A stretch of 64,000 nucleotides of DNA from Mustelus asterias (GCF_964213995.1 NC_135817.1:70866001-70930000), one strand, 5' to 3'. Counted from the first letter of the stretch, positions 17,941-62,806 are shown. Made by a program: numbers and translations. The notes: generated from the sequence alone by a model not told the origin.

Positions 17941-18060
17941 CACCTGTGACAGAGACTGTAGGTCATGTGTTAGACTCCTCAGTCACCTGAGAACTCGCTT
18001 TCAGTGTGGAAGCAAGTCATCCTCGACTCCGAGGGACTGCTTAAGAAGAACAGAAGAAGA
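17920..18060 (+). mobile_element. RTE-clade LINE 3' end
   Basis: Encodes TTTCPTCDRDCRSCVRLLSHLRT (C-terminal CxxC..H finger), then gtcatcctcgactccgagggactgc and an (AGA)n tail. Confidence 0.65.
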
Positions 18061-30003: not shown

Positions 30004-31160
30004 ACCATAGAACATAGAACAGTACAGCACAGAACAGGCCCTTCGGCCCACGATGTTGTGCCGAGCTTTATCTGAAACCAAGATCAAGCTATCCCACTCC
30101 CTATCATCCTGGTGTGCTCCATGTGCCTATCCAATAACCGCTTAAATGTTCCTAAAGTGTCTGACTCCACTATCACTGCAGGCAGTCCATTCCACACCCC
30201 AACCACTCTCTGCGTAAAGAACCTACCTCTGATATCCTTCCTATATCTCCCACCATGAACCCTATAGTTATGCCCCCTTGTAATAGCTCCATCCACCCGA
30301 GGAAATAGTCTTTGAACGTTCACTCTATCTATCCCCTTCATCATTTTATAAACCTCTATTAAGTCTCCCCTCAGCCTCCTCCGCTCCAGAGTGAACAGCC
30401 CTAGCTCCCTCAACCTTTCCTCATAAGACCTACCCTCCAAACCAGGCAGCATCCTGGTAAATCTCCTCTGCACTCTTTCCAGCGCTTCCACATCCTTCTT
30501 ATAGTGAGGGGACCAGAACTGCACACAATATTCCAAATGTGGTCTCACCAAGGTCATGTACAGTTGCAGCATAACCCCACAGCTCTTAAACTCCAACCCC
30601 CTGTTAATAAAAGCTAACACACTATAGGCCTTCTTCACAGCTCTATCCACTTGAGTGGCAACCTTTAGAGATCTGTGGATATAGACCCCAAGATCTCTCT
30701 GTTCCTCCACAGTCTTCAGAACCCTACCTTTGACCCTGTAATCCACATTTAAATTAGTCCTACCAAAATGAATCACCTCACATTTATCAGGGTTAAACTC
30801 CATTTGCCATTTTTCAGCCCAGCTTTGCACCCTATCTATGTCTCTTTGCAGCCTACAACAGCCCTCCACCTCATCCACTACTCCACCAATCTTGGTGTCA
30901 TCAGCAAATTTACTGATCCACCCTTCAGCCCCCTCCTCTAAGTCATTAATAAAAATCACAAAGAGCAGAGGACCAAGCACTGATCCCTGTGGCACTCCGC
31001 TAGCAACCTGCCTCCAATCCGAAAATTTTCCATCCACCACCACCCTCTGTCTTCAATCAGACAGCCAGTTACCTATCCAATCGGCGAACTTTCCCTCTAT
31101 CCCACACCTCCTGACTTTCATCATAAGCCGACCATGGGGGACCTTATCAAACACCTTATT
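30004..31160 (-). mobile_element. 5'-truncated copy of the same young CR1 family
   Basis: Near-identical to 19780-20930; 319-aa RT C-terminal ORF; same (TGTTCTA)n tail. Confidence 0.95.
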
Positions 31161-36849: not shown

Positions 36850-39800
36850 CCTAAGTGACACTTCACATCTCCTCGGGTTAAGGTGCTAAATTGGGGGAAG
36901 GCGAACCACAACCGGATTAGGCAGGGTTTGGAGGCTGTTGTTTGAGAGAGGCTGCTTGAAGGTAAATCCTCATTTGGCACGTGGGAGTCTTTCAAGGAGC
37001 AGTTGATAGGCGTTCAGGACAGCCATGTGCCAATGAGAAGGAAGGTCAGGGAAGGCAGGATTCAGGAACCATGGGTGACCACGGAAATTGTTCGTCTAGT
37101 CAAAAAGGAAAAGGATGCAGACATGAAGTCTAGGCAATTAAAAACAGATGAAGCATTTGAAGAATACAGGAGAAGTAGAAAAGAGCTCAAACAGGGAGTT
37201 AGGAAGGCAAGAGCGGGTTCACGAAATGTCCTTGGCAGACAGGGTTAAGGAGAATCCCAAGGCATTTTATACATATATTAGGAGCAAGAGGGTGGCTAGA
37301 GAAAGAGTTGGTTCACTTCAGGACAAAGGAAGGAAATTATGTGCAGAACCAAAGGAAATGGGTGAGTTTCTTAATGAGCACTTTGCATTGGTATTCACAA
37401 AGGAGGGGGACATGTTGATTGACGGTGTCTTGGAGAGGTATGTAAACCCTTTAGAACAAGTCATCATTATGAGGGAGGAAGTGTTAGGTGAATTAAAAAG
37501 CATTAAGGTAGACAAGTATCCAGGGCCAGATGGCATCTATCCCAGATTACTGAGGGAGACAAGAGATGAAATTGCTGGGCCTCTAACAGAAATTTTTGTT
37601 TCTTCGTTGACCACTGGTGAGGTACCAGGGGTTTGGAGGATAGCCAATGTTGTCCTGTTATTTAAGAAGGGTAGCAAGGATAACGCGGGTAATTATAGGC
37701 CAGTGAGTTTGATGTCAGCGATAGTGAAATTGTTTGAGAAGATTCTAAGGAATAGAATCTATACACATTTGGAACCAAATGGTCTTGTTAGCGACAGACA
37801 GCATTTGTTTTGTACGTGGGAGGTCATGTTTCATTAATTTGATTGAGTTTTTTGAGGAGGTGACAAAAATGATTGACGAGGGAAGGGCTGTGGATGTTGT
37901 CTACAAGGACTTTAGTAAGGCATTTGACAAGGTCCCGCATGGCAGGCTGGTGCAAAAGATTAAATCTCACGGGATCAGGGGTGAACTAGCTAGATGGATT
38001 CAGAACTGGCTTGGCCATAGAAGACAGAGGGTAGCAGTGGAAGGGTGTTTTTCTAAATGGAGGTCTGTAACTAGTGGTGTTCCAAAGGAATCAGTGCTGA
38101 GACCTCTGCTTTTTGTAATATATATATAAATGACTTGGAAGAAAACATAGCTGGTTTGATTAGCAAGTTTGCGAATGATACTAAGATTGGCGGAGTTGCA
38201 GATAGTGATGAAGATTGTCAGAGAATACAGCAGGATATAGATAGACTGGAAAATTGGGCGGAGAAATGGCAGATGGAATTTAATCCGGACAAATGCAAGG
38301 TGATGCATTTTGGTAGATCCAATTTAGGTAGGAGCAATAAAATAAATGGCAGAACAATCAAGAGCATAGACAAAGAGAGAGATCTGGGAGTACAGGTCCA
38401 CAGATCCTTATAAGTGGCAGCACTGGTGGAAAAAGTGGTGAAGAAAGCATATGGCGTGCTTGCTTCATCGGATGGAGCATCGAGTATAAAAGTTGGCAAA
38501 TTATGTTACAGTTGTATAAAACCTTTGTTTGGCCAGATTTGAAATACTGGGAGCAATTTTACCATTTTGATTCCAAGTGCTGAATCTGGGTGTGATTCAG
38601 ATCTGACTTGGAAACTTGTTCCCAGGTGCCTCCATACGCACTCAGCCTGAAAAAAAAATTGTGAGTCTGAATCGTGCTGTGGGCGAGGCTTATCGCGCCT
38701 GAAACGTTGCAGCTCCAATCGGAACCTTCAACTGCGCATGCGCAGTGAAAATAAATTTGAAAAACGCTCCCCTGTCACATCGTTCCCGGGCCGCAAAAAG
38801 CGGATAAAGCAGCCCGGGAGCGATGGCCCCCACAGACATCACCCCACCCCCACAACATAACTATCCCCCTTATCCATGCCCCCCCCCACAACCCAGACCG
38901 ATCGCGACCCCCTGCCCCTTCCTGTCCACCGATCGCCCGCAGAGTGGCAGTGGTCCCCCTTCCCCCCCACCGATCACCCACAGAGTGGCAGCAGACCCCC
39001 CTGCCCCCGCCTCCCCCCCCCCCCCCCCCACCAGTGATCCATCTGGCCTCTCTACTCCCCACCCCCCCCCCCCACTAAAGAGCGATCTGTCCCTTGTTCT
39101 CCCCTCCCCCCCCCCACTAGAGAATGATCTGGCCCTCTCTCCCCCCCGACTAGAGAATAATCGGGCCTCCCTCACCCCCCCCACCTCCCAACCAGAGAGC
39201 TATCTGGCCTCCCTCCCCTGCGCCCCTCCAGAGAATGATCAGGCCACCCTCCCTCCCCCCCCCTACCAGAGATAAACCTGACCTGCCTCCTCCTCCCTCC
39301 CCCGCACCAGAGAATGATCCGGCACGCCTCCTTCCTCCCCCCCCCTCCCCCCCAACCGATCTGAGTCAGAGAGCCGCTGGAAGCTCTGAACTTACCTCTT
39401 CAGAAGCTGGAGCGCCCGAAACAGACCTTTGCCGAGCATGTCTGTTTTGTACTGAATCTGGACGGGCGAACACGATGGTAAAGGGGGAAATGCTGGTAAG
39501 ATTGGGCGTCCAGCTCATTAAGTCAATTTAAATGCATGCAAATGCATTTAAATTGACGTCACGCCTGTTTCAAGCGTGGTTACGATCATGGCCATTTTCA
39601 GACCTTGGTAAAGTGGGAATCTGCGCGGACATGGACGCGGATTGCGCTATTCACCTCACGCTCGACTTTATGAAGTTTTTTTGCCCAAAAACGGGCACAG
39701 CCCAATGGTAAAATCAGTCCCACTGTGTCCAATTCTGGTCACCACACCACTAGAAGGATGTGGAGGCTTTGGAGAGAGGATGTTGCCTGGTATGGAGGGT

Positions 39801-49474: not shown

Positions 49475-49710
49475 CATCAGCAGAGTAGAAAAGGCAGCTG
49501 TGGTTTCACACAGATTTTCTCACCTGATCCAGCACTCCAGGCAATTCTGGGAAAACTGCACCCATTGTGAAGCACCTTGGAACATTTCTTAATGTTATGG
49601 GTGTAAGTTGGCGTTTTAAATCATACTTTTATAACACACTAGCTAAGTATTTATTCTCTTATCAAATTTAGTGATTTCTGTTCTTATATCTTCAGGATGA
49701 GACAAATGAA

Positions 49711-49774
49711 ATGATGCCTCTGGGAACACAAACAGTCAAACTTTGTGTTTTGCTTTACTTCTTTCTCACTGCAG
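49711..49774 (+). CDS. Signal-peptide exon of VJ-C1 IgSF receptor (CD28H/TMIGD2-like V domain)
   Basis: ATG at 49711 gives MMPLGTQTVKLCVLLYFFLTA (hydrophobic core), ending GCAG|gtaag (phase 1). A pyrimidine-rich acceptor ttcttatatcttcag ending at 49695 implies a further upstream exon. Confidence 0.8.
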
Positions 49775-50343
49775 GTAAGACTTAATTCAAGTCTAACATC
49801 ATGAAAGACTGCAGTAATTATTAATTGCAAGGGGAGAACAAAGAAAATAGAGATGTTTCCCTGCTATACCAACCAATGGAAATATTCCTTACTTTAACTT
49901 TCCAAGTCAAAGCATAGAAATAGGTTCTACCACTTTTATTAATCATAATATAGTTTTAAAAATATACCCATAATCTCCGTAATATTCACATCTCTAATTT
50001 CTTCTTTGCTCCTTGGTGCATGGAACCTCCTTAAAAGTTACCTGTTGATCACCAACATATTCTTCCTCTATCCATTGCTCAAATGTCTGCTTATTTTCAT
50101 TTTCATGATGTGCTTTGGGGTATTTTATTACACGGGTATTAGAGTGGGAGTTGTTATTGTTCCTCGGAATGAGTTGTTGAACCCTATATGGAATCCTAAC
50201 TCAGCATTGTTCAAATTCTGCCACATATATGCCAAGTAAAATCCTATGCTTTGCCTCACCTGCATTTTTACATCCACCACGTGAGAGAGAGGTGGTTTCT
50301 CCATTAATTACCAATGACACTTGTGGTATGGCCCATTTTTATG

Positions 50344-50604
50344 TAAAGTTTATTTATTAGTCACAAGTAGGCTTATAGTCACACTGCAATGAAGTTACTG
50401 TGAAAATCCCCAAATCGCCACACTCCGACGCCTGTTCGGGTACACTGAGGGAGAATTTAGCATGGCTGATGCTAAATTCTGTGGGAGGAAACCGGAGCAC
50501 CCGGAGGAAACCCACGCAGACACAGGGAGAATGTGCAAACTCCACACAAGCTGGGAATCGAACCCTGATCCCTGTGAGGCAGCAGTGCTAACCACTGTGC
50601 CACC
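50344..50604 (-). mobile_element. V-SINE, alternative tail (leader-V intron)
   Basis: Family head, core and tail. Confidence 0.88.
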
Positions 50605-50952
50605 CTATGTGATATCATGTGGAATCAGTGCAAAGGGAAGGCAGAGAGCAAAAATTGCAAAGAGAAAAACACGAAACTATGAGCTGAGAACAAGAACAGA
50701 TTTTTTTTTTTAAATAGGCAAGGGTATAAGCAATTATATGAAGAAAGGAGGTCAATAAAGGATAGAATTTTAGAAATGGATTTACACAGATTTCATTTAA
50801 CAGATCGGTGCTGGAAGGTATTAAATCATCAATATCTTCTTTTCATGGGGGAAATGATTCACATTGATCTTTCGATTTATTCAATTCATTGAATTACAGA
50901 CTGCTAACTGAGTTGTACATCCAGCACAGAATTGCATTCATTATTGCATTCA

Positions 50953-51264
50953 GGGTGGCACAGTGGTTAGCACTGCTGCTTCACAGTGCCAGGGACCTGG
51001 GTTCAATTCCCGGCTTGGGTCACTGTCTGTGTGGAGTTTGCACTTTCTCCCCGTGTCTGTGTGGGTTTCCTCCGGGTGTACCAGTTTCCTCCCACAGTCC
51101 AAAGACGTGCAGGTTAGGTTGATTGGCCATGCTAAATTGACCCTTTGTGTCAGGGGGACTACGAGGGTAAATATACGAGGTTATGGGGATAGGACCTGGG
51201 TGGCATTGTTGTGGGTGCAGGCTCGATGGGCCAAATGGCCTCCTACTGCACTGTAGATTCTGTG
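50953..51264 (+). mobile_element. V-SINE, CR1-like tail (leader-V intron)
   Basis: Ends about 50 bp upstream of the V-exon acceptor. Confidence 0.9.
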
Positions 51265-51314
51265 ATTGCAAATAGAAGATTGTGTATTATTTATCCTTTT
51301 TGTACTTTCTGCAG

Positions 51315-51674
51315 TGGGAGGCAAAAACCTGTCTGTCTTCCAAACACCGTCAGAGATCAGAGTGTTGAAGGGGGGCACTGCACGAATAAATTGTTCATAC
51401 AGCAATACAGTTGAACAATGGAGGATTATGTGGAAACGAAACACAAGCGCAAAACCATTATGTCAACGAATTGAAAATGCAAAGAATTCCACGTCTATCG
51501 TCCATTGCACAAAACGTAACTACATTACAGACGCCCCCTCAGCAAAATCCTCATCCTTAATAATCACTGATCTTCATTTCAATGACTCCGACATTTATTC
51601 TTGTGAAGTTGCCTATGAGATACCTCCCCCTCAACAGATGGAAAAAGGAAAAGGCACAAGTATCACAGTGGAAG
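51315..51674 (+). CDS. V-set (VJ-type) Ig domain exon
   Basis: Acceptor ctttctgcag|, donor GAAG|gtgagt, 360 nt, phase 1-1. LSVFQTP...RINC...IMWKR...DSDIYSC...GKGTSITVE: B- and F-strand Cys, C-strand Trp, DxxxYxC and J-like GxGT. Confidence 0.93.
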
Positions 51675-51925
51675 GTGAGTTTCACATCCACAACTCATTT
51701 ATCACTCTTCTGATTTTAATGCTTTATGTTTATCTCTATATTATAGGTAGAGAATTAGGGGGAAAAATCTCAAATAGCAACTTGCATTTATACAGCCCCT
51801 TTAACATAGTTAAACATCTCACGGTGCAGCACAGGAGCAGGTTCAAACAAAATTTGGCACCAAGTCACATAAGAGCAATTACTTGGTCCAAAAGTAGGTT
51901 TTAAGGACTGTCTAAAAGGAGGAGA

Positions 51926-52156
51926 CACAGTAAGAAGTTTAACAACACCAGGTTAAAGTCCAACAGGTTTATTTGGTAGCAAAAGCCACACAAGCTTTCG
52001 GAGCTGCAAGCCCCTTCTTCAGCACCTGAAGAAGGGGCTTGCAGCTCCGAAGGCTTGTGTGGCTTTTGCTACCAAATAAACCTGTTGGACTTTAACCTGG
52101 TGTTGTTAAACTTCTTACTGTGTTCACCCCAGTCCAACGCCGGCATCTCCACATCA
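51926..52156. mobile_element. Penelope-like foldback insertion
   Basis: 98-nt inverted arms 51925-52022 / 52026-52123 with one mismatch and a 3-nt loop; 13-bp TSD taaaaggaggaga (51913-51925, 52157-52169). Confidence 0.8.
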
Positions 52157-52988
52157 TAAAAGGAGGAGAGACAGATAGAGAGGCAGTAAGGCTCAGGGAT
52201 GGAATTACACAGCTTCAGGCCTTGACATGTGCAAGAACAGTCCAGAACTAGAGAAGCTGGAGGGGATGACGGAGAGGCACACTCAGAGAGGGATTTGAAA
52301 ACAAGGTTGAGAATTTGAAAGTTGAGGCACTGTCAGTCAGGAAGCCTGCATAGCACAGACGGGCAAATGGAACTTGGTCCTGGATAATTACAGGCAAAAA
52401 ACATCAAAGGGTGGAATTCTCTCACCCTTCCCGCCAGCAGGATTTCTGTCCTGCCGAAGGGTGACACCACCCACCCCCCCTCCCTCCCTCCCCCCAACCC
52501 CCCACCCCCTTTCCCTGAGGGTGGGACAAGTGAGACACACAAAACACCCGTAGACATTGGTGGTACCGGAAGATCCCACCAGGGGCCAATGACAAGCTGC
52601 CTCTGCCACTGGAAAACACACCCAGGGAGGGGGTGTGAGTCCTGGCCTAGCTGCATTCAATGTGTTGTAAAAGAGCAGACTGTACTGAAGGGTAAGCTAT
52701 ACATCTGCCTTACGTTGAGGCTGCCTCTCACTTGTTTCAGACAGGTGGGCTACACACCCATTTGCAGGTTCGCCTGAAAATGATGTCAAGTGGGCCCTTG
52801 GGCATCAAGGGGGTGGCCGCTATGCCTCTTCGATTTTCAATTGGCAGCCTTTTGTTTTTCAGATGAGTGACACATAGTTGAAAATTGCTCCTTGCATGTC
52901 CCCAAGAAGCCCGAGGGAATATTCAGTACAAACTAGCAAACAGCCTAAACCATTAGAAGTCTAATAACTTGTTACAATTGATTTTCAG

Positions 52989-53294
52989 CTTCTCCCACTG
53001 TTCAGTTAAGAGCAGAGACTTTGCCTTACCCTCATGAAGGTATACAGCTAATCTGCATCTCACTGGAGTTCTACCCTGAGAACATTCAAGTGTCCTGGTT
53101 TCAAGATGGACAGTTGATCACCAATGGCACCAAGAATGGGAGGCTCTGTGCTAACACTGATGGCTCATTCTCCATTATAAGCTTCCTGAATCTTTCTCTA
53201 TTTGACTGGAATGAAGGCAGGAATTATTCCTGTCAAGTGAACCACTCAACACTGTCTACACCCATCACTGAAAGGATTTCTGCTCCGAATGAAG
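52989..53294 (+). CDS. C1-set Ig constant domain exon
   Basis: Acceptor attttcag|, donor GAAG|gtaaaa, 306 nt, phase 1-1. LICISLEFYPENIQVSW...DGSFSIISFLNL...W..GRNYSCQVNHSTL contains the C1 signatures FYP..I.V.W and YxCxVxH. Confidence 0.93.
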
Positions 53295-53619
53295 GTAAAA
53301 ATGTCAGTTCGTTTTGTTATAAAAATCTTTGGACTCTGCAGACTTGTGGAATTTTAAGTTATGTGATTCCAATTACTTTGGGGTAGGATATACATACGAA
53401 TGTTGCACTTGTATCATTCTTTCTCCATCCATATCCCCCTTCCATGCCCAAACCTGACCTCGACCCTGGAAAAAAGCTGTTACCTCATTCACTTATAACT
53501 GCACTCTCAGAATCCCAACTCTCTAACCTTTGTGGCTCCATTTGCCACAATGTGCCTGCAGCTACTGATCTGCACAACTGCACCTTCACCTTCCATCTTG
53601 GATGTCCTGCTTTTTAATA

Positions 53620-54135
53620 AGACCAGTCCTCTCTCACCATTACTCTCACACATGTGCAATTTGGCCATTAAGATCAAGGTGAACCGATCAGCTCACTCTG
53701 CTGCTTCTCTCTCTTCCACAAACCCAATGGGCCAAGTTCCTCCAAAGCTACCCCATTCTCCAGCCCTGAACTCACATCTTCCTCTAGTTTGTCTCCTATC
53801 TCCCCATATCTTGTCCTCTATTGACTTTACTTCCATTAAACTGCTGATCACACAACTTCCCCTCCTGCTCCCCCATGTTGGCCAATATTGCTTGTGATCC
53901 ATTCCCTTTATAAATCTGCCATCACCACCCTCTGCTCAAAGGCCAACCCTTGATTCCACCATTCTTGTAAACTACAGGCCCATCTCCAACCTGCTTTTCC
54001 TCTCCAAAGCTCTTGAATGTGTTTCACTTCCCAAATCCATGCTCTGCTTTTCTGGAACATCGTATTTGAATCCTCCCAATCAGTTCGCCTCTCCCTCCTG
54101 CCACAGTGCCGAAACGGCAGCTCTAATCAATATAA
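53620..54135 (+). mobile_element. Old L2 LINE RT fragment
   Basis: aactacaggcccatctccaacctgcttttcctctccaaagctcttgaa = NYRPISNLLFLSKALE; tgccacagtgccgaaacggca = CHSAETA. Confidence 0.72.
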
Positions 54136-54325
54136 TCAAGGCGACATACTGCGGATGCTGGAATCTGAAGCAACAAGAGAAAATGCTGGAAAATCTCAGC
54201 AGGGTCACTCTCAGAATCCCATCTCAGAAGCAGCAGAGTGAGCTGATCGATTCATCTTGATCTTAGCAGGCAAACTGCACATGAGTGAGACAAATGGTGA
54301 GGGAGTACTGGTCTTATTATCTACT

Positions 54326-54606
54326 GGTGGCACGGTGGCACAGTGGTTAGCACTATTGCCTCACAGCACCAGGGACCTGGGTTTGATTCCCAGTTTGGGT
54401 CACTGTCTGTGTGGCGTTTGCACATTCTCCCCGTGTCTGCGTGGGTTTCCTCCGGATGCTCCGGTTTCCTCCCACATTCTGAAAGACGTGCTGGTTAGGT
54501 GCATTGACTCAAACAGGTGCTGGACTGTGGTGACTAGGGGGGAATTTCACAGTAACTTCATTGCAGTGTTAATGTAAGCCTTACTTGTTACTAATAAATA
54601 AACTTT
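54326..54606 (+). mobile_element. V-SINE, alternative tail
   Basis: Family head, core and tail. Confidence 0.9.
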
Positions 54607-55159
54607 TCTTAAAATTAAAAACCAGGACATCCAAGATGGAGGTGAGTTGCAGTTGTGCAGATCAGTAGCTGCAGGCATATTGTGGCAAATGGAACCATAA
54701 AGGTTAGAGAGTTGGGATTTTGAGAGTGCAGTTATAAGTGAATGCGGTAACAGTTTTTTTCCAGGGGTGGATACAGGAGGAGGTCGGGTTTGGGCATGGA
54801 AGGGGGATATGGATGGAGAAAGAGTGATACCTGATTCGAAATGTTGGCTCTATTCTCTCTCCACAGATGCTGTCAGACCTGCTGAGATTTTCCAGCATTT
54901 TCTATGTTTTTTTTTCAGCTCTTATCAACGTTGTAAGATATTTTCACCAGGGGCCCTGCTCCACCACTGATTCAGCCCCTACCGTGAGTTGATAGGGGGC
55001 TGGTGACAACTAAATATGCTTATTTCTGCTCGATGCAATAACTATATTTACCATTCACTTAATCAAAAGCAAACACTTACAATGCCTAATGTCCAACTTA
55101 CTTGCATGGGAGAGACTGTGTAGTGGTAATGTAATTAAATAAGACATTCAAAGGCCCAT

Positions 55160-55490
55160 ATGTCATAGGAGCAGAATTAGGCCATTCAGCCCATCAAGTC
55201 TGCTCTACCATTTAATCATGGCTGATAAGTTTCTCAACCCCATTCTCCTGCCTTTCCACAGAACCTTACCAATTAACAATCCATCTATCTGTCTTAAATG
55301 CACTCAATGACCTGGCCTCCACAGCCCTCTATGGCCATGAATTCCATAGATTCACCACCCTCTGGCTGAAGAAATTCTTCCTCAACTTGGTTCTAAAGGG
55401 TCGTCCCTTTACTCTGAGGCTGTGCCCTCGGATCCTTGTCTCGTCTACTAACAGAAACATCTTTCCCACGTCCACTCTATCCAGGACCCC
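55160..55490 (-). mobile_element. CR1 3' end
   Basis: LDRVDVGKMF...RGHSLRVKG...FFSQRVVNLWNS. Confidence 0.85.
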
Positions 55491-56437
55491 TGTGTACCAC
55501 CCAGGCAAGTACACAGGGGACATAGGTTCAAATCCCACCATGGGAGCTGGTGGAATTTACATTCAAACTGATTTTTAAAAATCTGGAATTAAAAGCTATT
55601 CTCAATTATACATTCATCCAAAAAACTATCTGGTTCACTCATGTCCTTTAGGGAAGAAAATCTGCCATCCGTACCTGGCCCACATGTGACTCCAGACCCA
55701 CAGTAAAGTTGACACTTACCTGCTGTCTGAAATGGCAAAGTAAGTGAAGTCCAAGGGCAATGAAAGATGGACAACAATGCTGGCCTTGCCAGTGACACTT
55801 GGGTCTCATGGAAGTATAGAGAAAGAAAGAGATAAGAATATTTTAGCCTTCAGCAATAGATGGTGATTGTTCTCTCTGAGACTGCTTCGTTCCAAGCTGC
55901 TTGAATCAATTATAGTTCATCACCTTTCTCATTTCCTGTCACAACACTCAGCTTATCTGACCTTTCTTATCACGCTCTGTTGAACCACTCGATAATCGGT
56001 TTGCCGTTTCATCTTGTGCCACACTGCTGTCGTGCGGCTGATGTTTATCACGTACACATTGTCCCCAAAGATCACCCATTAACCCTATTGCCCAACCATT
56101 TCACTCGGTGCGTTTATAGCAGTGTCCATTTTCCCATCATGCTTAGCAGTATCATTGGCCTGTTGTCTCCTACCATGCTTTGCACTCTCTCCTTTTAGTA
56201 GGCGGTCCATCTGCTGAGGCTACATACCATAGTCTACATGTACAGAAAATAAAGAAAAACTATTTCAACAGTCACTCACAGAAATATCACAAAGGTTGCC
56301 TTAAAACCACTTACATTGGTGTATAGCAAAAGCCTACATTATTCCATCCCTTTAAATGCTATGCAGCAATTGCATTTAATCATCATTTGCAACACGAGGC
56401 TTCATGCTCAGAATCACCAATAGCTTTTACTTGCCTT

Positions 56438-58669
56438 CACACCTTAGACTTCTGACTGCATTTACACACCTCAGTTAGCAGGTAGATTTTTATTACAAGT
56501 TGCACAGATATCAAAACCTGTGAAATCACTCTTATCCAGGGATGGGGGATCCAGGGGTTCAGGCCTCAGTTCCATAATGCCTTCCACCATCGGGTAATCA
56601 CCTGATTCGATTTCCTCAATGTTTCAGGCAACTTGGTAAAATCTCACAATAGAGCCTTTTGTTTTATCTTTAAGATTGGTGAGGTGTTCTGGTCGTAGGA
56701 GAATATCGTACCCAAAATTAGGCGCCTATGCAGTCAGTTCATGACTACTCATTTCATTCCCAATAGTGATGTTAAGATTACAGGACACATTAGTCAGGTA
56801 CATTTTGAATGCTCCAATGAGTCCTGGCCATTTGGGTACCATGTGTTCCTCATAGCTTATTGGATATGATTGTTTATTTATCACAAAGAGTTGATGCTTG
56901 CTCCTATAACATATAACTCTTTATTCTCATATAAGCTGTCCATATGGGAACACTATCCAAGTCTCCTGTTACCTTGGTGCAATTGATAACCCCTGGTGTC
57001 AATTCAATTCACACACGGGAATTTCACAATCCAACAAATAATAGGGACAGACCCATGTATTCCTCTTCCACTGACAGCCTCCCAAATCTGGAGCAACCCA
57101 TGTAGTCCCATCCATCCAGGCTAACCTGGAGGGAGCATGTAAAGATCTCAACTAGAGCTCTGAATGAGGAAAAATTCTCAACCCGGAATAAAGAATGATC
57201 TTCTATGGTCTCTGGAATGACTGGGTTAACAACATCAATCAATGATCTCTGCATTAGCCCACTTTTGTCACAGTCCTGTAGGACTGGCATCACTTGGGTT
57301 AGTTCCCTCGTTAGGGTATTATTCAACATCTAGGCCGGAATTTTACCATCCCGCTCACCGCGGGAATCGGAGCGGACAAGGGGCAGACCATGGAAAAGTT
57401 TGTTGACCTCGGGCGGGATTTTACGGTTTCTGGACGAGCGAGATGGTAAAATCCCACTCTTCATGTCTGAGGCTTGTTTCAGGTGCACAATTTTAACCCA
57501 GGAGGGTAAATTCTCCTGCACGATCTTCCTAAGATTGACTCTGGTTTGTTCCATGAGCCAAGAACCATACATCATGCAGATGTCATTCTTACTGCCTGAC
57601 GAGATACATCTCCCCCTTTCTTGTATATTTCATTGATAATGTGGTCCTGTCACTCATCTTCTTCCACTAGATCACTAACTCTCCTAAGACTATCTCCTCT
57701 TCTGTACCCATCTGTTGTTGAGTCTCTGCTATCCCCTGGATAATTTCCTCTAACCCGTAATGTAATCGATGAACTGACATTTCCAAACTCGCAACATCTA
57801 GGCTATTCATTATGGACATCCCAGTGTTAAAAATCCTGACCACATCCACAAGGGGATGATTATGGTCAGTGAGCCTGGGTAAGATGCTCTTTTGCAGAGT
57901 TGGTGCAGACTCAATGGGCCAAATGGCCTTCATCTGCACTGTAGGGATTTTATGGTTCTATGATGGACTAGTGGCCGGAGGTCTCTTCCTTTATTCTAAG
58001 CTCACTCTGGCATACATTCAAGAGCAATACAATTTACTGCTCACTCCCTACCCATGGAGCCCCATTGCTACCATCTTCTTTCCTGAATCACGTTCATTCT
58101 CCTGCCACAATTTTGGTTCGAACGTCAGGTCATAGTTCAATATTGGAAAGGTGCTGTTGTACGGCTCACCATTTGTCAGGGTTCAGATCTATTATCTCTC
58201 CCCCCAGTCCCTGCTATTTACTCAGGATGGTCCAAAGCCCATGCCACAGCTTTAAGATCCTTGTCCCTTTTTGTAGTTGTACTTTGCAAGCACATACACC
58301 TTCTCTGAACATGCTTTTAGAACAAATACGTTGCACAAATCACATGGTGCATGTTACGATGGGCACGAAGGGCAGGGGATAGATCCTCCCGTGGGTTTTG
58401 TGAAATATGAATGCCTTTCCTGAGCAAGTGGAGGCGTACCCAATGAGAAGTGGGGGTTAAAACCCATTGCTTCAACCTTGACCGGTAGGGTAGGTCCCCG
58501 AGTATGGTTGTAAGCAGTACAGCCGGCTCTTTGTTGTGTTATGATTGAAGGGTTTTTGGAGATGGACGACTGGTTTAGATGGCATTAATACAGTGCAATT
58601 TGAACCTTCTTCTTGAACAATGGAAAAATCCCAAACCGCTTGCTTTAACTTCATTTGTTCCGCATTTCA
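56438..58669 (-). pseudogene. Degraded endogenous viral envelope / class I fusion glycoprotein-like sequence
   Basis: Ordered on the minus strand: fusion-peptide-like VDVVRIFNTGMSIMNSLDVASLE plus heptad segment (about 57850-57670), central fragments, then aromatic WWKALWN*GLNPWIPHPWIR and a hydrophobic anchor VISQVLISVQLVI (about 56600-56480). Many stops and frameshifts. Confidence 0.5.
57332..57457. mobile_element. Short Harbinger-type MITE inside the env-like remnant
   Basis: ggccggaattttaccatcccgctc...gagcgagatggtaaaatccc inverted ends. Confidence 0.7.
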
Positions 58670-58972
58670 NNNNNNNNNNNNNNNNNNNNNNNNNNNNNNN
58701 NNNNNNNNNNNNNNNNNNNNNNNNNNNNNNNNNNNNNNNNNNNNNNNNNNNNNNNNNNNNNNNNNNNNNNNNNNNNNNNNNNNNNNNNNNNNNNNNNNNN
58801 NNNNNNNNNNNNNNNNNNNNNNNNNNNNNNNNNNNNNNNNNNNNNNNNNNNNNNNNNNNNNNNNNNNNNNNNNNNNNNNNNNNNNNNNNNNNNNNNNNNN
58901 NNNNNNNNNNNNNNNNNNNNNNNNNNNNNNNNNNNNNNNNNNNNNNNNNNNNNNNNNNNNNNNNNNNNNNNN
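58670..58972. other. Assembly gap (303 N)
   Basis: Run of N. Confidence 1.
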
Positions 58973-59420
58973 GGAATGGAACCCCTTTCTATTCATGAAA
59001 CGTGCAGAATTCTCCTCAGTGGCCTTGAGGGTGCCGTGGCTGCGGTCTATGGCCCCCAGCACATTTGGCATTCCAGTGATGGCCACCAATTCTGCAGCCC
59101 AGGCTTCCTGCTGGGCCTTGCCCACGTCAAATTTGACATACTGGATTGCCCAGGCGTACAGAGCATCCGTGACCTCCCTCACACACTTGTGTATGGACGA
59201 CTGTGAGATGCCACACAGGTTTCCACTGCCAGCCTGGTAGCAAAAAGTTTAGGGCGGCTGTCATTTTCACAGCCACCGGGAGTGGGTGCCCCCCTATGCC
59301 CCTGAGGTGCCAGGTACCACACTGCCTCCGTTTGTAGGCAGAGCCATTGGCGGCACACAATGTCCGACAGCTGCTCGAAGGACATTCGCATCCAGAACTG
59401 CCGAGGTCTCCGCTCCCTTC
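58973..59420 (-). mobile_element. PIF/Harbinger transposase fragment (HARBI1-like DDE nuclease), frameshifted
   Basis: GGHPLPVAVKMTAALNF then REVTDALY...GMPNVLGAIDRSH...FMNRKGFHS; matches the Harbinger GAIDGxH and NRKGxxS motifs. Confidence 0.85.
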
Positions 59421-60414
59421 TCCTCCTGCCCCCCCACCCCCCACCCCCCCTCCCCACACCCGTCGACACCCACCCATGGCAATTGTCGGCCATACAAGCC
59501 GCACACGCACACCACCCCCTCCCACACATACACACACACATACACAGATACACACACTCACACACACATAGTTGCTTTACAAGCCTGATGGCTGATTTGT
59601 GAGTCTTTGAAGAGCTCCCTCCCTCTCTGCTCAAACACTGAGATGCTCCTTGGTTTAAGTTTAGATGGATAATTTTTCATTGTCCACCTAAACTTAAACC
59701 AGCTCACGGCTAAGCCTCTGTCACCTTTGACGCTGGTTTCCCGTTATATTGAGGTCGGATGTGCTAGGCCTGTACACCCTTCCCCAGGGTAGTACCTGGT
59801 TGTCCTGCTTCCCCTCGTCCTCCTTCTTGGAGCGTATGAAGCGTGCCTCTTCTTCCTGACCTTTTGATTCCCCCAGGCCTCTGGCTGCTCAGAGTGACTG
59901 TCTTCTGTGGCCTCTCTGTGTGAGGGTGCCATGTCCATCTTCTATGTTCCTTTGCATGAAGCGCTCTGCACTCTTCTCCAGCACAAAGTTCCTCCTGGCA
60001 ACTGGGTGCATGAATCAGTAGGGGAAACAATAATTGCCCAGTGAGTCACTGAACTCTTCCTCTGATATGGTGGCCAAGTGCCAGTTTGAAATGCCACTGC
60101 CCCAGTAGTGTCGCAAAGAGCACAGGAGGGCACCATTGGTTGAAATGAGTGAATTAGTGTCTGTCCCATTCTGAGACACTCAGCACAATGAGTCACTTTC
60201 TGGGAACCCCTGGGCTTTTGACTGCTATCCAAGGTGTGGCTTCAATTGTGTGTTTGCTACCAACGCCTTTCAGTTAAAACTAAAGTGGGAAGAGGAGAAT
60301 CTATGGACAATTTTTGTCAGGTATATTTTAATGTGCAGTGATATAGGCATGAGTTAGTTGTGTAGAATGGCCATGGTGAAGTGTATAAAATGAATATCTT
60401 ACTGAAAAAATAGT

Positions 60415-61469
60415 GAGGGCGATTGTTCCAAAAACATTCAAAGTGTCAAAGTCGCGTCAAACTGGAGTAAATGCCACTGTTTTTTTCAACGGGAATTTCA
60501 AAATGAATCTCCCACACTCTGTGCACAGCAGAATGCACCAGTGTGAATCACAGTTAAAATTCAGGGGGCAGGGCCTATTCCCGCAGGAGAGGCTGGCAGC
60601 ATAGTGCTGAGTGCGCCCCCGCACATGCGCCAATCCGTCAGTGCCGAGTTCGGCACATGCACAGTTGCCCCGCATTGCCAGTCTCCCGCTTGCTGGCCAG
60701 TCCCGTGACCTCCACATCGCTGGCCATGCGACCCCTCCACACCCCAACCGCTACCGCTGGCCTCCCGGACATGTCCGGGCCAGCCTCAACCCCTGCCCTC
60801 CCCCAGCCCGCCTCGATCTCCCAACCCCCGCAGACCCCAACCCCACCACCCCCCCCGCAGATCCTGACCCCACTCCCCCCACCCCAATTGCTGCCCTCCC
60901 TCCCTCTGCCCACGATTCCAAAGTGCAGAGTAGCAGCGGGAACCTCCAACCCCACCGATCTCCCCCCAGAGGCCCCACCCCCATTAGGCCCCACCCCTCT
61001 GTCCCCACTCCCTTGCCACTGCCTGGTGCCCGGTGGGCAGTGCCAAGATGCCCCCTGGGCATTGCCATTTAGGCAGTGCCAGGGGGTCAGGCTGGCATTG
61101 CCAGGCTGGCAATGCCCAGGGGGCACCCCCTTCATGCATGACCTCCAGGGGGACCTCCATGGCACCCCCCCTCCCTTCACTCCAGTGGGGTTGGGCTGCC
61201 ATTCCCCCAGGAGTGAGGCTATTGTAAACCCCGCTGGAGTGGAACACTCTTGGTGGGGTGGGGGCAGAATCTAGTAGACCTCAGCCCTGGGCCTGCTAAT
61301 GAAGTGCTAATTCTAATTTAAATAAATTATACAGCTCCGTGCCAATTTCTGGCACAGAGCTGATGGCGCGGGAAAGCCGGCGGCCAGAGGCTCGCGGAGG
61401 CCGTGGCGCCCAGCGAGGAGCCCGTCAAACGGCCTCCACTTAAGTCTCCCAGCTGAGAGAATCGCCCCC
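60415..61469. mobile_element. Non-autonomous GC-rich Harbinger-type DNA transposon
   Basis: Ends gagggcgattgttc / gagaatcgccccc; flanks agt/att; C-rich interior like 38549-39721. Confidence 0.65.
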
Positions 61470-61631
61470 ATTATGGTTACCAAACAGCCCACATCACCTT
61501 CATCATCTTGTCATACAAATTTATTTAACAGTTACACTGTACGCAAAAAATAAGATTGAAGTCTTGAGTGATGCTTTGTGGATTATTTCTCAACACAGAT
61601 TTCACTCCATGTTCCCAATAACTTTCAACAG

Positions 61632-61736
61632 GTCCTCCCAGTGATAACCTATTCTGGATATCCCCAACAGTTAGCTGTCTAATTGCATTGATGGTGTTCG
61701 TGATCATTGCAGTGTTTTGGGCATGTTTAATTGCAA
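61632..61736 (+). CDS. Transmembrane exon
   Basis: Acceptor tttcaacag|, donor GCAA|gtaagt, 105 nt, phase 1-1. (G)PPSDNLFWISPTVSCLIALMVFVIIAVFWACLIA; uncharged hydrophobic helix in frame with both neighbouring exons. Confidence 0.88.
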
Positions 61737-62231
61737 GTAAGTAGTCTTGATTTTTTACATTTCAATCTACAGTCAGAAAGTCAGAGGGCGGAAATGTATG
61801 AGAATTCAGCAGTCCCAGTCAGAAACTGGCTCCACTGGCCAGTTTTCTCTCCAGATCTTGTCTCTTTAACTGCCAAAACAAAGAGTGGCCATGATTTGCA
61901 CGGTCACTCTGGCGAGGCTGGGACTCTTAGAGCAAGGAAACAGCTCCAGTAAGAGATTGGGCTGCCATTTTGAAAGGGTTAGGGTTAATCTCCCCCCCCC
62001 TCCACCCACTGAGGTATCTGTGGCCTTCACCTCCTTCCCATTCCTAACCATCACCAGCATCCCCAACCCCTTCCCCCCTCGACATTGCCCCCCCCCCTTC
62101 ACCCCCGATCGTCACCAGCATGGCTGCCCCTTCCCCCCCTGCCCCCTACCCCACCTCAATCATGGCTGGCATTGCCGCCCTCCCTCCCCCCCGACCATTG
62201 CCAGCAGCACCCCATCCCCCCCACCCCATCA

Positions 62232-62520
62232 CCAGGGACCTGGGTTCGATTCCCGGCTTGGGTCACTGTCTGTGTGGAGTTTGCACATTCTCCTCGTGTC
62301 TGCGTGGGTTTCCTCCGGGTGCTCCGGTTTCCTCCCACAGTCCAAAGATGTGCGGGTTAGGTTGATTGGCCATGCTAAAATTGCCCCTTAGTGTCCTGAG
62401 ATGTGTAGGTTAGAGGAATTAGTGGGTAAATATGTAGGGGTATGGCCTGGGTGGGATTGTGGTCGGTGCAGACTCGATGGGACGAATGGCCTCTTTCTGT
62501 ACTGTAGGGTTTCTATTCTA
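62232..62520 (+). mobile_element. V-SINE (5'-truncated), CR1-like tail
   Basis: B box, core and tail. Confidence 0.88.
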
Positions 62521-62678
62521 TAAATAAATCAAATCAAATAAGAATAAATTAATTTATCTGGCTTCCATTTTAAAGCAATCTCTCCACACTGAAGTTGACC
62601 GTATTTATGGGCTGTAACCTTTGCTGTTGTTTTGTCTATTGAGCTTCTCTGAGAAATTTCCTGTTTGGCTTGTTGCAG

Positions 62679-62806
62679 AAAAAATGGTTTCATCGACAAA
62701 GGAATCAGCCGTGCCTGACAGTGGCCAAAGTGGGAGAGAGCAACCGAACACTGATGACACCGTCATCTACTCTCTGCTTGGTCCAGAGCTCTCTTATCAT
62801 ATATAA
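62679..62806 (+). CDS. Terminal cytoplasmic exon with ITIM
   Basis: Acceptor ttgttgcag|, phase 1. (K)KMVSSTKESAVPDSGQSGREQPNTDDTVIYSLLGPELSYHI*; VIYSLL fits the ITIM consensus VxYxxL. Basic KK stop-transfer is created by the splice. Confidence 0.82.

What the first reader, a model, noticed from the sequence alone, without database searches (positions are those of the whole stretch)
49711..62806. Intact non-rearranging VJ-C1-TM-ITIM receptor: antigen-receptor architecture with an inhibitory tail
Seen: five exons with canonical AG/GT sites, all phase-1 introns, join into a stop-free 963-nt CDS (320 aa): leader, V with germline-joined J-like GKGT strand, C1 domain, uncharged TM and a tail with VIYSLL. 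The TM and leader exons are absent from the ORF track. Established: V(J)+C1 is the domain layout of a TCR chain or Ig light chain; C1 domains are largely restricted to Ig/TCR/MHC/beta2m/tapasin/SIRP/B7-type molecules; non-rearranging VJ-C1 genes are discussed as relics of the pre-RAG antigen-receptor ancestor. Inference: this is a germline-encoded shark inhibitory immune receptor of that class, possibly uncharacterised.
Basis: partly seen in the sequence, partly recalled or inferred. Interest (0 to 1): 0.88.

Follow-up and report, generated by a model that had tools for sequence, protein, structure and literature searches.

The report
Shark CD28H-like V-C1 inhibitory receptor gene
This is an intact starry smooth-hound shark gene for a membrane receptor that joins a CD28H-like binding domain to an antibody-type constant domain and an inhibitory tail, and it belongs to an old, unnamed family of paired inhibitory and activating immune receptors.

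Summary
Five + strand exons (49711-49774, 51315-51674, 52989-53294, 61632-61736, 62679-62806) have AG/GT sites and phase-1 introns and sum to 963 nt. Exon by exon they equal residues 53-372 of an automatic NCBI model, 'immunoglobulin kappa light chain-like [Mustelus asterias]'. The N gap lies inside intron 3. Orthologues in other cartilaginous fishes run from C1 straight into the TM, so no hidden exon is needed, but continuity across the gap is not shown.

The layout is V + C1 + uncharged TM + canonical ITIM (VIYSLL). However, the V domain carries the CD28H/CD28H-like signature (YxCExxxEIPPP...GxG), and its nearest relatives outside the family are CD28-family V domains, not Ig/TCR V. The C1 domain is most like UrIg2 C1.

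The gene is the inhibitory member of a family found in sharks, rays and a chimaera, with V-C1 relatives in sturgeon. The family has an activating-type partner with Arg in the TM on the same chromosome. V domains are orthologous across species, while C1 is homogenised within species (98% against 49% in Mustelus).

No RNA evidence could be obtained. The scan's first readers noted similar V-C1 genes upstream on this piece and on other pieces. No paper I could search names the family. Verdict: new variant of a known kind.

The parts
49696..49710 (+). Stretch just 5' of the start codon. The NCBI model P0004 reads it as coding (…DETNE) after an acceptor AG at 49694-49695. The rest of that model's 52-aa N-terminal extension is not in the window.
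   Evidence: only the 8-mer starting at residue 48 of P0004 maps, at 49696. One search gives the sequence. Orthologues start at the MxxLGTQ leader, so the extension is probably a longest-ORF artefact or a 5' UTR exon.
49711..49774 (+). Exon 1: start codon and most of the signal peptide (21 codons + 1 nt). Donor GT, phase 1.
   Evidence: The leader is conserved in orthologues. The AF2 model shows a helix at residues 56-74 of P0004.
51315..51674 (+). Exon 2: end of the leader plus the whole V domain, including the J-like strand. It has 5 N-glycosylation sequons and 4 Cys (the canonical pair plus an extra pair).
   Evidence: Pfam V-set 4.4e-14 and V-set_2 (ICOS) 1.5e-7, 32.2 bits against a cut-off of 28..
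51596..51658 (+). F strand, FG loop and start of the G strand: Y-S-C-E-V-A-Y-E-I-P-P-P…G-K-G-T. This is the CD28H-type CDR3-loop signature followed by GxG.
   Evidence: Sequence. Motif definition from PMC11599192, sections 15-16. Motif scan.
52989..53294 (+). Exon 3: C1-set constant domain (4 N-glycosylation sequons) plus the start of the connecting peptide.
   Evidence: Pfam C1-set 8.4e-19 against C2-set_2 2.2e-4. The best single-domain match in the PDB is UrIg2 C1, 9dmx_A residues 153-230, 52.3 bits. It is 98% identical to the C1 of the paralogue P0011.
58670..58972 (.). Assembly gap (303 N) inside intron 3. It was not filled and not looked up.
   Evidence: Within the window, the 1-kb flanks match only themselves, apart from one short SINE-like piece in the left flank and one short inverted self-match in the right flank.
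61632..61736 (+). Exon 4: connecting peptide and uncharged transmembrane helix.
   Evidence: it is the best hydrophobic phase-1/phase-1 exon candidate between 53295 and 62700 (score 3.11).. It is colinear with the catshark orthologue P0002. AF2 helix at residues 300-334 of P0004.
62679..62806 (+). Exon 5: 42-residue cytoplasmic tail and the TAA stop.
   Evidence: tblastn of P0002 gives 65% identity, E 5e-11.
62762..62779 (+). ITIM V-I-Y-S-L-L. A second tyrosine follows three residues before the C-terminus (…L-S-Y-H-I).
   Evidence: YxxL is kept in 11 of 11 inhibitory-type relatives that have a tail. The canonical residue at position -2 (V) is kept in 5 of those 11.

Best explanation
The locus is an intact, single-copy, non-rearranging gene of Mustelus asterias for a type I membrane glycoprotein. 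Its parts in order are: signal peptide, one V domain of the CD28H/CD28H-like kind (EIPPP loop, GxG bulge, extra Cys pair), one C1-set domain, an uncharged TM helix, and a 42-residue tail with one canonical ITIM.

It is the inhibitory member ('type I') of an unnamed V-C1 receptor family present in sharks, rays and a chimaera, with V-C1 relatives in sturgeon. The same chromosome also carries an activating-type partner ('type A', P0011). The partner has an almost identical C1 (98%) and a divergent V (49%). It has an arginine in the TM and a short tail.

Inferred mechanism, not shown here:
- The V domain binds a cell-surface ligand, perhaps of the B7 family as CD28-family V domains do.
- Src-family kinases then phosphorylate the ITIM tyrosine.
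- SHP-1, SHP-2 or SHIP is recruited and damps leukocyte activation.
- The type A partner signals the opposite way through an ITAM adaptor that pairs with its TM arginine.

The V exons have stayed orthologous since before the shark-ray split. The C1 exon is kept alike between the two genes of each species by gene conversion.
For: Gene model:
- The five exons match P0004 exactly, exon by exon.
- They are colinear with the catshark protein P0002.

Domains:
- Pfam assigns V-set, V-set_2 and C1-set.
- The AF2 ectodomain has pLDDT about 80-97.
- The Foldseek matches listed (ranks 1-50) are all V+C1 antibody light chains.

Family range:
- 18 of 18 significant hits, among 871 candidates, come from 13 genera of cartilaginous fishes.

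Paired design:
- 11 of 11 type I tails keep YxxL.
- 5 of 8 type A models have a complete TM with Arg. The other 3 are truncated or mispredicted after C1.
- P0004 and P0011 lie on the same 91.9-Mb contig.

Concerted evolution:
- In the C1 tree the type I and type A genes pair within species: Mustelus 100/99*, Scyliorhinus 100/98*, Carcharodon 95/91*.
- In the V tree the 10 elasmobranch type I rows form one clade (98/99*).

CD28H-like V domain:
- The motif fits the definition in PMC11599192.
- 34 of 101 hits outside the family in the exhaustive search carry the same kind of motif.
- Named examples are TMIGD2 [Ascaphus], CD28-like [Polyodon] and CTLA4-like sharks.
- Against the family V HMM the sturgeon V-C1 proteins score 83 bits, single-V CD28-like proteins about 45-80 bits and TCR beta V 48 bits.
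- In the 51-row V tree a starred clade (95/93*) holds 20 rows, all of them V-C1 proteins, including the sturgeon ones.
Against: - There is no expression evidence.
- No ligand, phosphorylation or adaptor binding was tested. The ITIM could equally act as a YxxL endocytosis signal.
- The ITIM residue at position -2 is not canonical in rays (A or T) or in the chimaera (G).
- The partner gene lies outside the window and was seen only as a database protein.
- The AF2 two-domain geometry matches B7-H6 best (Z 18.5). B7-H6 is a ligand, not a receptor.
- The V tree has only one antigen-receptor V domain, used as outgroup, so 'CD28-like rather than Ig/TCR-like' rests mainly on motif and score ranking.
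- Continuity across the N gap is inferred from orthologues only.
Confidence: 0.7

Rival explanations
1. It is a B7/butyrophilin-type ligand (V + C + TM + short tail) rather than a receptor.
For: In the wide structural search the best match to the two-domain model is B7-H6 (4zso_E, Z 18.5, rmsd 3.7 A, 197 residues aligned). Next come a checkpoint protein, butyrophilins and B7-H3 at Z 16.3-16.6. Pfam also gives weak C2-set_2 (CD80-like) and C2-set_3 (butyrophilin) matches for exon 3.
Against: - At sequence level the V domain is nearest to CD28-family receptor V domains.
- C1-set scores 68 bits against 22 for C2-set_2.
- A partner with Arg in the TM and an ITIM-bearing member is a receptor design.
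- The interdomain angle of a single-chain AF2 model is weak evidence. The V-only matches (TCR V, PD-1, CD28) are tied at Z 14.7-16.
Confidence: 0.07
2. The inhibitory and activating chains are two halves of a germline-encoded, TCR-like heterodimer held together by their near-identical C1 domains. In that case the locus would be a true relic of a pre-RAG antigen receptor.
For: - The layout is V + C1, with the J-like strand in the V exon.
- C1 is closest to UrIg2 C1 and to Ig C domains.
- C1 is kept 92-98% identical between the two genes in four shark species. This would preserve a shared C1-C1 interface.
- The Foldseek matches listed (ranks 1-50) are all antibody light chains.
Against: - The family has no conserved membrane-proximal Cys.
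- The V domain lacks the F/W of the J consensus and groups with CD28-like V domains.
- An ITIM on one chain and an Arg-TM on the other is the pattern of opposing paired receptors, not of one complex.
- Homogenised domains are usual in paired receptor families (listing of PMC3210942; abstract start only).
- No dimer prediction was available.
Confidence: 0.08
3. It is a member of an already described non-rearranging family, namely shark NCR3/NKp30, PRARP, SIRP or a germline-joined IgL, so it is not new.
For: - Automatic names include 'Ig kappa/lambda light chain-like', 'SIRP-like' and 'tapasin-related-like'.
- Shark IgL lambda is germline-joined (PMC12227049, section 15).
- NCR3 and PRARP are cited as non-rearranging VJ genes.
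- The papers on PRARP, UrIg (2023) and shark NCR3 were not readable here.
Against: - IgL has no TM or tail, and the V domain matches IgL V at only 24 bits per domain.
- SIRP has V-C1-C1. UrIg and UrIg2 have 3 or 9-11 C domains.
- NCR3 is treated as a VJ-domain gene, with no C1 mentioned, in the sections read.
- None of the 18 named hits, and none of the 30 hits whose names were looked up, is called NCR3, NKp30 or PRARP.
- PMC11599192 states that every CD28-family gene has a single V domain (abstract).
Confidence: 0.12
4. It is an unexpressed or decaying gene copy whose intact frame is fortuitous.
For: No RNA run was found. No AATAAA or ATTAAA lies between the stop codon and the window's end. 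The surroundings are dense in LINEs and SINEs.
Against: - 320 codons over five exons are free of stops and have canonical splice sites.
- Orthologues with the same architecture exist in sharks, rays and a chimaera.
- Functional motifs are conserved.
Confidence: 0.03

Closest known systems
CD28H (TMIGD2) and its paralogues CD28HL1-3 (extended CD28 family; Quiniou et al. 2024, PMC11599192; abstract and sections 14-16 read, plus passages of the Introduction, Methods, PD-1 section and Discussion)
   Same: - The V domain has the signature YxC[E/K/Q/N]xxxEIP, in the EIPPP form that the paper reports for chondrichthyans, followed by GxG.
- The tail has a Tyr-based motif. CD28HL3 of bony fishes also carries an ITIM.
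- A neighbouring family member in Chiloscyllium (P0056) carries YVNV and YENT, which fit the CD28H YxN consensus.
- TMIGD2 [Ascaphus] and CTLA4-like or CD28-like proteins are among the nearest V domains outside the family.
   Different: - The paper states that all nine CD28-family genes have a single V ectodomain. This gene has an added C1-set domain.
- There is no stalk Cys and no YxxxxT motif in the TM.
- It has a paired activating partner with Arg in the TM.
- Synteny with the CD28H or CD28HL marker genes could not be tested.
UrIg and UrIg2 (non-rearranging elasmobranch VJ-C1 genes; Flajnik et al. 2025, PMC12227049; abstract, Introduction, the UrIg2 results section and two Discussion sections read)
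   Same: - It is non-rearranging, with a single-exon V domain that includes a J-like strand, followed by C1-type domains.
- NCBI names it an Ig light chain automatically, as the paper reports for UrIg2.
- The C1 exon's best single-domain PDB match is UrIg2 C1 (52.3 bits).
   Different: - It has one C1, against 3 in UrIg and 9-11 in UrIg2.
- It is a membrane receptor with an ITIM. UrIg is only secreted.
- Its V domain is of the CD28H kind, and no UrIg2 V match appeared among the best 60 PDB hits.
- The family reaches the chimaera and sturgeon, whereas the paper says UrIg and UrIg2 are retained only in elasmobranchs.
SIRP-alpha/SIRP-beta and other paired IgSF receptors such as KIR, and the teleost NITRs (their architectures are recalled, not taken from a call)
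   Same: - An inhibitory member with an ITIM and an activating member with a basic TM residue share very similar ectodomain parts.
- A V domain with a J-like strand is followed by C1 (SIRP).
- Domains are homogenised between the partners.
   Different: - SIRP has V-C1-C1 and several tail tyrosines. NITRs have no C1.
- Here the membrane-proximal C1 is the homogenised part, while the V domains have diverged (49%) and are orthologous across species.
- The inhibitory V domain evolves faster than the activating one in 10 of 10 species pairs.
NCR3/NKp30, PRARP, lamprey 'TCR-like' and hagfish APAR (cited; details recalled, papers not readable here)
   Same: They are non-rearranging receptors with a joined VJ-type V domain. 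Some have an ITIM or a charged TM.
   Different: No sequence of these families was available, so there is no test of kinship. None of the named database hits bears these names.

Membership tests
Pfam C1-set immunoglobulin domain | Score above the C1-set gathering cut-off and above the C2 and I-set models | tested here: met
   Exon 3 scores C1-set 68.2 bits (cut-off 21, E 8.4e-19). C2-set_2 scores 21.7 bits and C2-set_3 16.9 bits. The same holds for relatives.
ITIM-bearing inhibitory receptor | Cytoplasmic (S/I/V/L)xYxx(I/V/L) motif (consensus recalled), with an uncharged TM | tested here: met
   V-I-Y-S-L-L lies at 62762-62779, and the TM exon has no charged residue. Function was not tested. 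Only 5 of 11 relatives keep the canonical residue at position -2.
Paired (inhibitory/activating) receptor family | A second gene with a closely similar ectodomain, a basic residue in the TM and a short tail | tested here: met
   P0011 is from the same species and the same 91.9-Mb contig. Its C1 is identical at 99 of 101 positions and its V at 54 of 111. Its TM holds Arg. The same pairs occur in Scyliorhinus, Carcharodon, Pristiophorus and Hemitrygon. Adaptor binding was not tested.
CD28 family (as defined in PMC11599192) | [quoted passage not shown] | tested here: not met
   The ectodomain is V + C1. The paper's abstract says each family gene has a single V domain.
CD28 family (CD28H/CD28HL branch) | CDR3-loop motif YxC[E/K/Q/N]xxxEIP (EIPPP in chondrichthyans), followed by GxG | tested here: met
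   Y-S-C-E-V-A-Y-E-I-P-P-P…G-K-G lies at 51596-51658. Pfam V-set_2 (ICOS V-set) scores 32.2 bits against a cut-off of 28.
CD28 family (CD28H/CD28HL branch) | Conserved synteny: fsd1/stap2 for CD28H, man2b for HL1, slbp/tacc3 for HL2, prkab1b/pla2g1b/tmem233 for HL3 | not testable with these tools
Rearranging antigen-receptor chain (TCR, IgL) | V and J as separate segments with recombination signals. J motif FGxGTx(L/V)xV. A membrane-proximal or C-terminal Cys for the interchain bond. | tested here: not met
   The V domain and its J-like strand are one exon (51315-51674). The strand reads K-G-K-G-T-S-I-T-V, without F or W. There is no conserved Cys between C1 and TM. The V + C1 layout itself is met.
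UrIg/UrIg2 | A VJ exon followed by three or more C1 domains. V and C domains cluster with UrIg. | tested here: not met
   There is one C1 only. C1 resembles UrIg2 C1, but the V domain's best 60 PDB matches do not include UrIg2. No tree with UrIg sequences was possible.
SIRP | A V-C1-C1 ectodomain (recalled) | tested here: not met
   One C1 exon lies between V and TM in the window and in 9 full-length orthologues. The 'SIRP-like' names are automatic.
Shark NCR3/NKp30 family; PRARP | Sequence orthology to the published genes | not testable with these tools
   The papers and sequences are not held. No hit is so named.

The most novel reading that the evidence does not exclude
The V-C1 cluster comprises an ITIM member, an Arg-TM member and a YxN member. 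Its V domains are of the CD28H kind and its C1 is of the Ig/UrIg kind. It may preserve the ancestral form from which the single-V CD28H/CD28-type co-stimulatory receptors arose by loss of the C1 exon. [quoted passage not shown]
Probability: 0.15. Interest if true: 0.85.

Novelty: new variant of a known kind. Interest (0 to 1): 0.6.

Why it matters
Two literatures are kept apart at present. One covers non-rearranging VJ-C1 genes sought as relatives of the antigen-receptor precursor (UrIg, UrIg2). The other covers the CD28 family, which is defined by a single V domain and whose origin is unknown.

This gene and its relatives combine a CD28H-type V domain with an Ig-type C1 domain. They are at least as old as the split between elasmobranchs and the chimaera and, if the sturgeon proteins are true kin, as old as jawed vertebrates.

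They also give cartilaginous fishes a clear paired inhibitory/activating receptor system with an unusual pattern. The membrane-proximal domain is homogenised, the ligand-binding domains are old and divergent, and the inhibitory V domain evolves faster.

If the genes are expressed on shark lymphocytes or NK-like cells, they are candidate checkpoint receptors whose ligands, possibly B7-family proteins, could be sought directly.

Tried and rejected
Rejected readings:
- Germline-joined IgL. The gene has a TM and a tail, and its V domain matches IgL V only weakly.
- SIRP, UrIg and UrIg2. The number of C domains differs.
- A second Ig exon or an alternative Arg-type TM exon hidden in the window. tblastn with 9 family proteins found only the five exons.
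- A transposase reading of the minus-strand ORF beside the gap. Pfam found nothing, so I make no claim about it.

Led nowhere:
- RNA evidence. The run search found 2 runs from one study, of unknown kind, none on record as RNA.
Synteny with MHC paralogons or with the CD28H marker genes was therefore not tested.
- The C1-only word search returned family members only.
- The protein atlas gave generic V+C1 clusters, and a PD-1 cluster for the V part. These are leads only.
- Structural search cannot separate V families. TCR V, PD-1 and CD28 tie at Z 14.7-16.
- The 52-aa N-terminal extension of the NCBI model is not in the window, apart from its last 5 residues.
- No poly(A) signal lies before the window's end.

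Literature:
- Ten searches were sent. Two of them were slips that did not complete. The eight answered searches, plus one on 'PRARP' that returned only unrelated uses among the 20 of 106 papers listed, found no paper that describes a V-C1 gene with a CD28H-type V domain.
- Not held: Fu et al. 2019 on PRARP and Flajnik et al. 2023 on UrIg. I did not try to fetch Ohta et al. 2019 or Kinlein et al. 2021.
- Supplements are closed. The supplementary data sheets of PMC11599192 (sequence lists of chondrichthyan CD28H and CD28HL) and the supplement of PMC12227049 might list these genes or their V exons. That could lower the novelty.

Full report
OBSERVATION

Reading the window and locating borders by script gives five + strand exons:
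- E1 49711-49774 (64 nt)
- E2 51315-51674 (360 nt)
- E3 52989-53294 (306 nt)
- E4 61632-61736 (105 nt)
- E5 62679-62806 (128 nt, ending in TAA)

All internal borders are AG/GT and all four introns are phase 1. The lengths sum to 963 nt. E4 was the top hydrophobic candidate among all phase-1/phase-1 open exons between 53295 and 62700.

One search translated each exon alone. The five peptides are exact substrings of the database protein P0004, at residues 53-73, 75-193, 195-295, 297-330 and 332-372. The four split codons give the four single residues in between.

P0004 is NCBI's automatic model 'immunoglobulin kappa light chain-like [Mustelus asterias]'.

P0004 has 52 further N-terminal residues. 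Only the last five of them are coded in the window, after an acceptor at 49694-49695. All orthologues start at the MxxLGTQ leader, so I take 49711 as the true start.

THE GAP

The only N run (58670-58972) lies inside intron 3 and touches no coding frame. I neither filled it nor looked it up.

Continuity cannot be shown from the window. The 1-kb flanks match nothing else in the window, apart from one short SINE-like piece in the left flank and one short inverted self-match in the right flank.

Indirect support comes from orthologues. The catshark protein P0002 maps colinearly onto all five exons. In 9 full-length orthologues C1 runs straight into the connecting peptide and TM. No hidden exon is needed.

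DOMAINS

Pfam results:
- E2: V-set at 4.4e-14, and above the cut-off for V-set_2, the ICOS V-set model (32.2 bits against 28).
- E3: C1-set at 8.4e-19 (68.2 bits), against 21.7 bits for the CD80-like C2 model.

The TM exon holds no charged residue. The tail holds V-I-Y-S-L-L (62762-62779), a canonical ITIM, and a second Tyr three residues from the end. There are 5 + 4 N-glycosylation sequons.

An AlphaFold model of P0004, built with a 22-row family alignment, has pLDDT of about 80-97 over both Ig domains and a helix at residues 300-334. The Foldseek matches listed (ranks 1-50) are all antibody light chains over about 230 columns.

A search of 48,161 representative chains that does not depend on Foldseek ranks B7-H6 first (Z 18.5, rmsd 3.7 A, 197 residues). 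Butyrophilins and B7-H3 follow at Z about 16.5. V-only matches (TCR V, PD-1, CD28) are tied at Z 14.7-16. I give little weight to the interdomain angle of a single-chain model.

THE FAMILY

A word-indexed search with the catshark orthologue found 18 significant proteins among 871 candidates. All are from cartilaginous fishes of 13 genera: sharks, the rays Pristis, Mobula and Hemitrygon, and the chimaera Callorhinchus. All bear automatic names such as IgL-like, SIRP-like, tapasin-related-like or uncharacterized.

Their sequences and alignment fall into two types.

Type I, to which the window's gene belongs:
- It has an uncharged TM and a tail ending in x-I/V-Y-x-x-L-G-Q.
- YxxL is present in 11 of 11 tails.
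- The residue at position -2 is the canonical V in 5 of 11, all of them sharks. It is A or T in rays and G in the chimaera.

Type A:
- It has a TM with an arginine near its outer third and a short acidic tail.
- The arginine is seen in 5 of 8 models. The other three are truncated or run into unrelated sequence after C1.

Both types occur on one contig in Mustelus (P0004 and P0011), Scyliorhinus, Carcharodon and Hemitrygon.

In Chiloscyllium punctatum the locus tags run 2799 (type A), 2801 (a third, more distant V-C1 gene, here called 'X') and 2802 (type I) on one scaffold. The tail of the X gene carries YVNV and YENT.

Two unchecked first-reader notes place further V-C1 or CD28-like V features 45 kb and 93 kb before this window's start. 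This agrees with such a cluster, but I could not read that DNA.

PAIRED-RECEPTOR EVOLUTION

In the V tree (19 rows) the 10 elasmobranch type I rows form a starred clade (98/99*). Type A rows of sharks and the ray lie outside it. The split between type I and type A is therefore older than the shark-ray split.

In the C1 tree (20 rows) the type I and type A genes pair within species: Mustelus 100/99*, Scyliorhinus 100/98*, Carcharodon 95/91*.

Identity between type I and type A within a species:

| Species | V | C1 |
|---|---|---|
| Mustelus | 54/111 (49%) | 99/101 (98%) |
| Scyliorhinus | 55% | 98% |
| Carcharodon | 54% | 92% |
| Pristiophorus | 60% | 95% |
| Hemitrygon | 44% | 77% |

This is the mark of gene conversion confined to the C1 exon.

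In 10 of 10 species pairs the type I V domains are less alike than the type A V domains, for example 64% against 81% for Mustelus-Scyliorhinus. The C1 identities are equal.

WHAT KIND OF V DOMAIN

An exhaustive HMMER search of 1.84 billion representatives with the V exon gave 110 hits at E <= 0.001. Of these, 16 had E <= 1e-10 and 1 had E <= 1e-30. Seven full V-C1 family members scored 87 bits or more, and scores dropped below them.

Nine of the 110 hits belong to the family. Of the other 101, 34 carry YxCxxxxEIP or a P-x-P…GxG loop.

Thirty hits were looked up for names. Informative names:
- TMIGD2 [Ascaphus] (a member of a hit's cluster)
- CD28-like [Polyodon]
- CTLA4-like [Carcharodon, Stegostoma]
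- one TCR beta chain

The survey of the CD28 family (PMC11599192) defines CD28H and its paralogues by YxC[E/K/Q/N]xxxEIP, with EIPPP in chondrichthyans and reptiles. It also notes GxG as the link to VJ-type domains. I read the abstract and sections 14-16, plus passages of the Introduction, Methods, PD-1 section and Discussion.

The window reads Y-S-C-E-V-A-Y-E-I-P-P-P…G-K-G-T, which fits. The same paper states that every family gene has a single V domain, so the C1-bearing form is outside its definition.

Scores against an HMM of the family's V domains:

| Group | Bits |
|---|---|
| Family | 158-208 |
| X gene | 136-143 |
| Two sturgeon V-C1 proteins | 83 |
| Single-V CD28-like proteins | about 45-80 |
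| TCR beta V | 48 |

In a 51-row V tree rooted on that TCR beta V, a starred clade (95/93*) holds 20 rows, all of them V-C1 proteins. These are the type I and type A genes, the X gene and the two sturgeon proteins. A second V-C1 group lies elsewhere with weak support (86/46). It comprises axolotl P0049, shark and ray 'SIRP-like' P0134 and P0136, and the truncated P0050. The tree holds only one antigen-receptor V domain, so it cannot by itself exclude an Ig/TCR affinity.

WHAT KIND OF C1 DOMAIN

The best single-domain PDB match of E3 is the C1 domain of UrIg2 (9dmx_A 153-230, 52.3 bits). Next come UrIg2 C2 (40.8 bits) and the first C-type domain matched in entry 2rcj_C (38.2 bits).

Against an HMM of the family's C1 domains, the sturgeon protein P0080 scores 85.7 bits. 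This is far above TCR beta C (46.3 bits) and the 'SIRP-like' P0117 (35.9 bits). The sturgeon proteins are thus nearest in both domains and are probably true kin. If so, the family would date to the common ancestor of cartilaginous and bony fishes.

MECHANISM

Shown:
- the architecture
- the ITIM
- the uncharged TM
- the Arg-TM partner
- conservation across species
- the mode of evolution

Inferred:
- Ligand binding through the V domain's FG-loop face, as in CD28-family receptors.
- Phosphorylation of the ITIM and recruitment of SHP or SHIP phosphatases.
- Opposite signalling by type A through an ITAM adaptor.

The YxxL motif could also serve endocytosis. Nothing is known of expression. I put 0.7 on this reading.

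COMPARISON AND NOVELTY

The gene works like SIRP-alpha/beta, KIR or NITR pairs (architectures recalled). Its V domain is of the CD28H branch and its C1 resembles UrIg2. It fails the defining feature of each named family:
- CD28 family: single V domain.
- UrIg and UrIg2: three or more C domains.
- SIRP: V-C1-C1.
- TCR and IgL: split V and J, and an interchain Cys.

Kinship with NCR3 and PRARP could not be tested, because neither the papers nor the sequences were available.

Ten literature searches were sent, two of which were unanswered slips. Among the answered ones none found a description of a V-C1 gene with a CD28H-type V domain. Closed supplements of PMC11599192 and PMC12227049 might hold such genes.

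I therefore call it a new variant of a known kind. It is real and intact, already present as an automatic gene model, but unnamed and not analysed in what I could search.

The scan's first readers flagged similar V-C1 genes elsewhere in this genome. I tested none of them.

Noticed in passing
window:51925-52123: A near-perfect foldback lies in intron 2. It has two 98-nt arms, 99% complementary, 3 nt apart. It gives identical short ORFs on both strands. It may be a MITE-like element or an assembly artefact.
   Followed up: partly
window:19856-23715 (- strand); also 30084-31043 (-), 31998-32918 (+), 1278-2000 (+), 37148-38129 (+): There is a long LINE-type ORF (1005 aa, with endonuclease-like and reverse-transcriptase-like text) with an upstream 320-aa ORF, plus several truncated copies of the same kind. 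The 49 kb upstream of the gene are mostly such repeats. No family search was run on them.
   Followed up: no
window:15606-16510 (- strand) and the 16001-18000 composition bin: A G/C-skewed simple repeat (GC 0.65, GC skew -0.84) translates to GGWRSGWV-type repeats on the minus strand.
   Followed up: no
window:50963-51256, 54257-54577, 62120-62365 and others: Many copies of one short, SINE-like repeat in both orientations fill the introns and flanks. Their ORFs share text of the kind …AQWLALLPHS…GSIPGLG…CGVCTFSP….
   Followed up: no
window:60600-61280: A GC-rich, proline-rich, low-complexity stretch in intron 3 has long overlapping ORFs on both strands. Pfam finds nothing in the 205-aa + strand ORF.
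   Followed up: partly
P0004 residues 1-47 (not in the window): The NCBI model starts 52 residues before the conserved leader, in an exon or exons that are not in the 49.7 kb upstream part of this window. Either there is a very distant 5' exon or the model is chimeric.
   Followed up: partly
P0056/P0126 (Chiloscyllium), P0080/P0132 (Acipenser), P0049 (Ambystoma), P0117/P0134 (Scyliorhinus), P0093/P0136 (Narcine): Further V-C1 membrane proteins with P-P-P loops were seen:
- A third cluster member in Chiloscyllium with YVNV and YENT in its tail.
- Two sturgeon proteins.
- An axolotl protein with V-C1-V-C1.
- A separate shark and ray group. The catshark member has two ITIM-like motifs in its tail.
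   Followed up: partly
type I against type A V domains (stored proteins): The inhibitory-type V domain is less conserved between species than the activating-type V domain in 10 of 10 species pairs. I recall that in many paired receptor families the activating member diverges faster, which would make this the reverse.
   Followed up: partly
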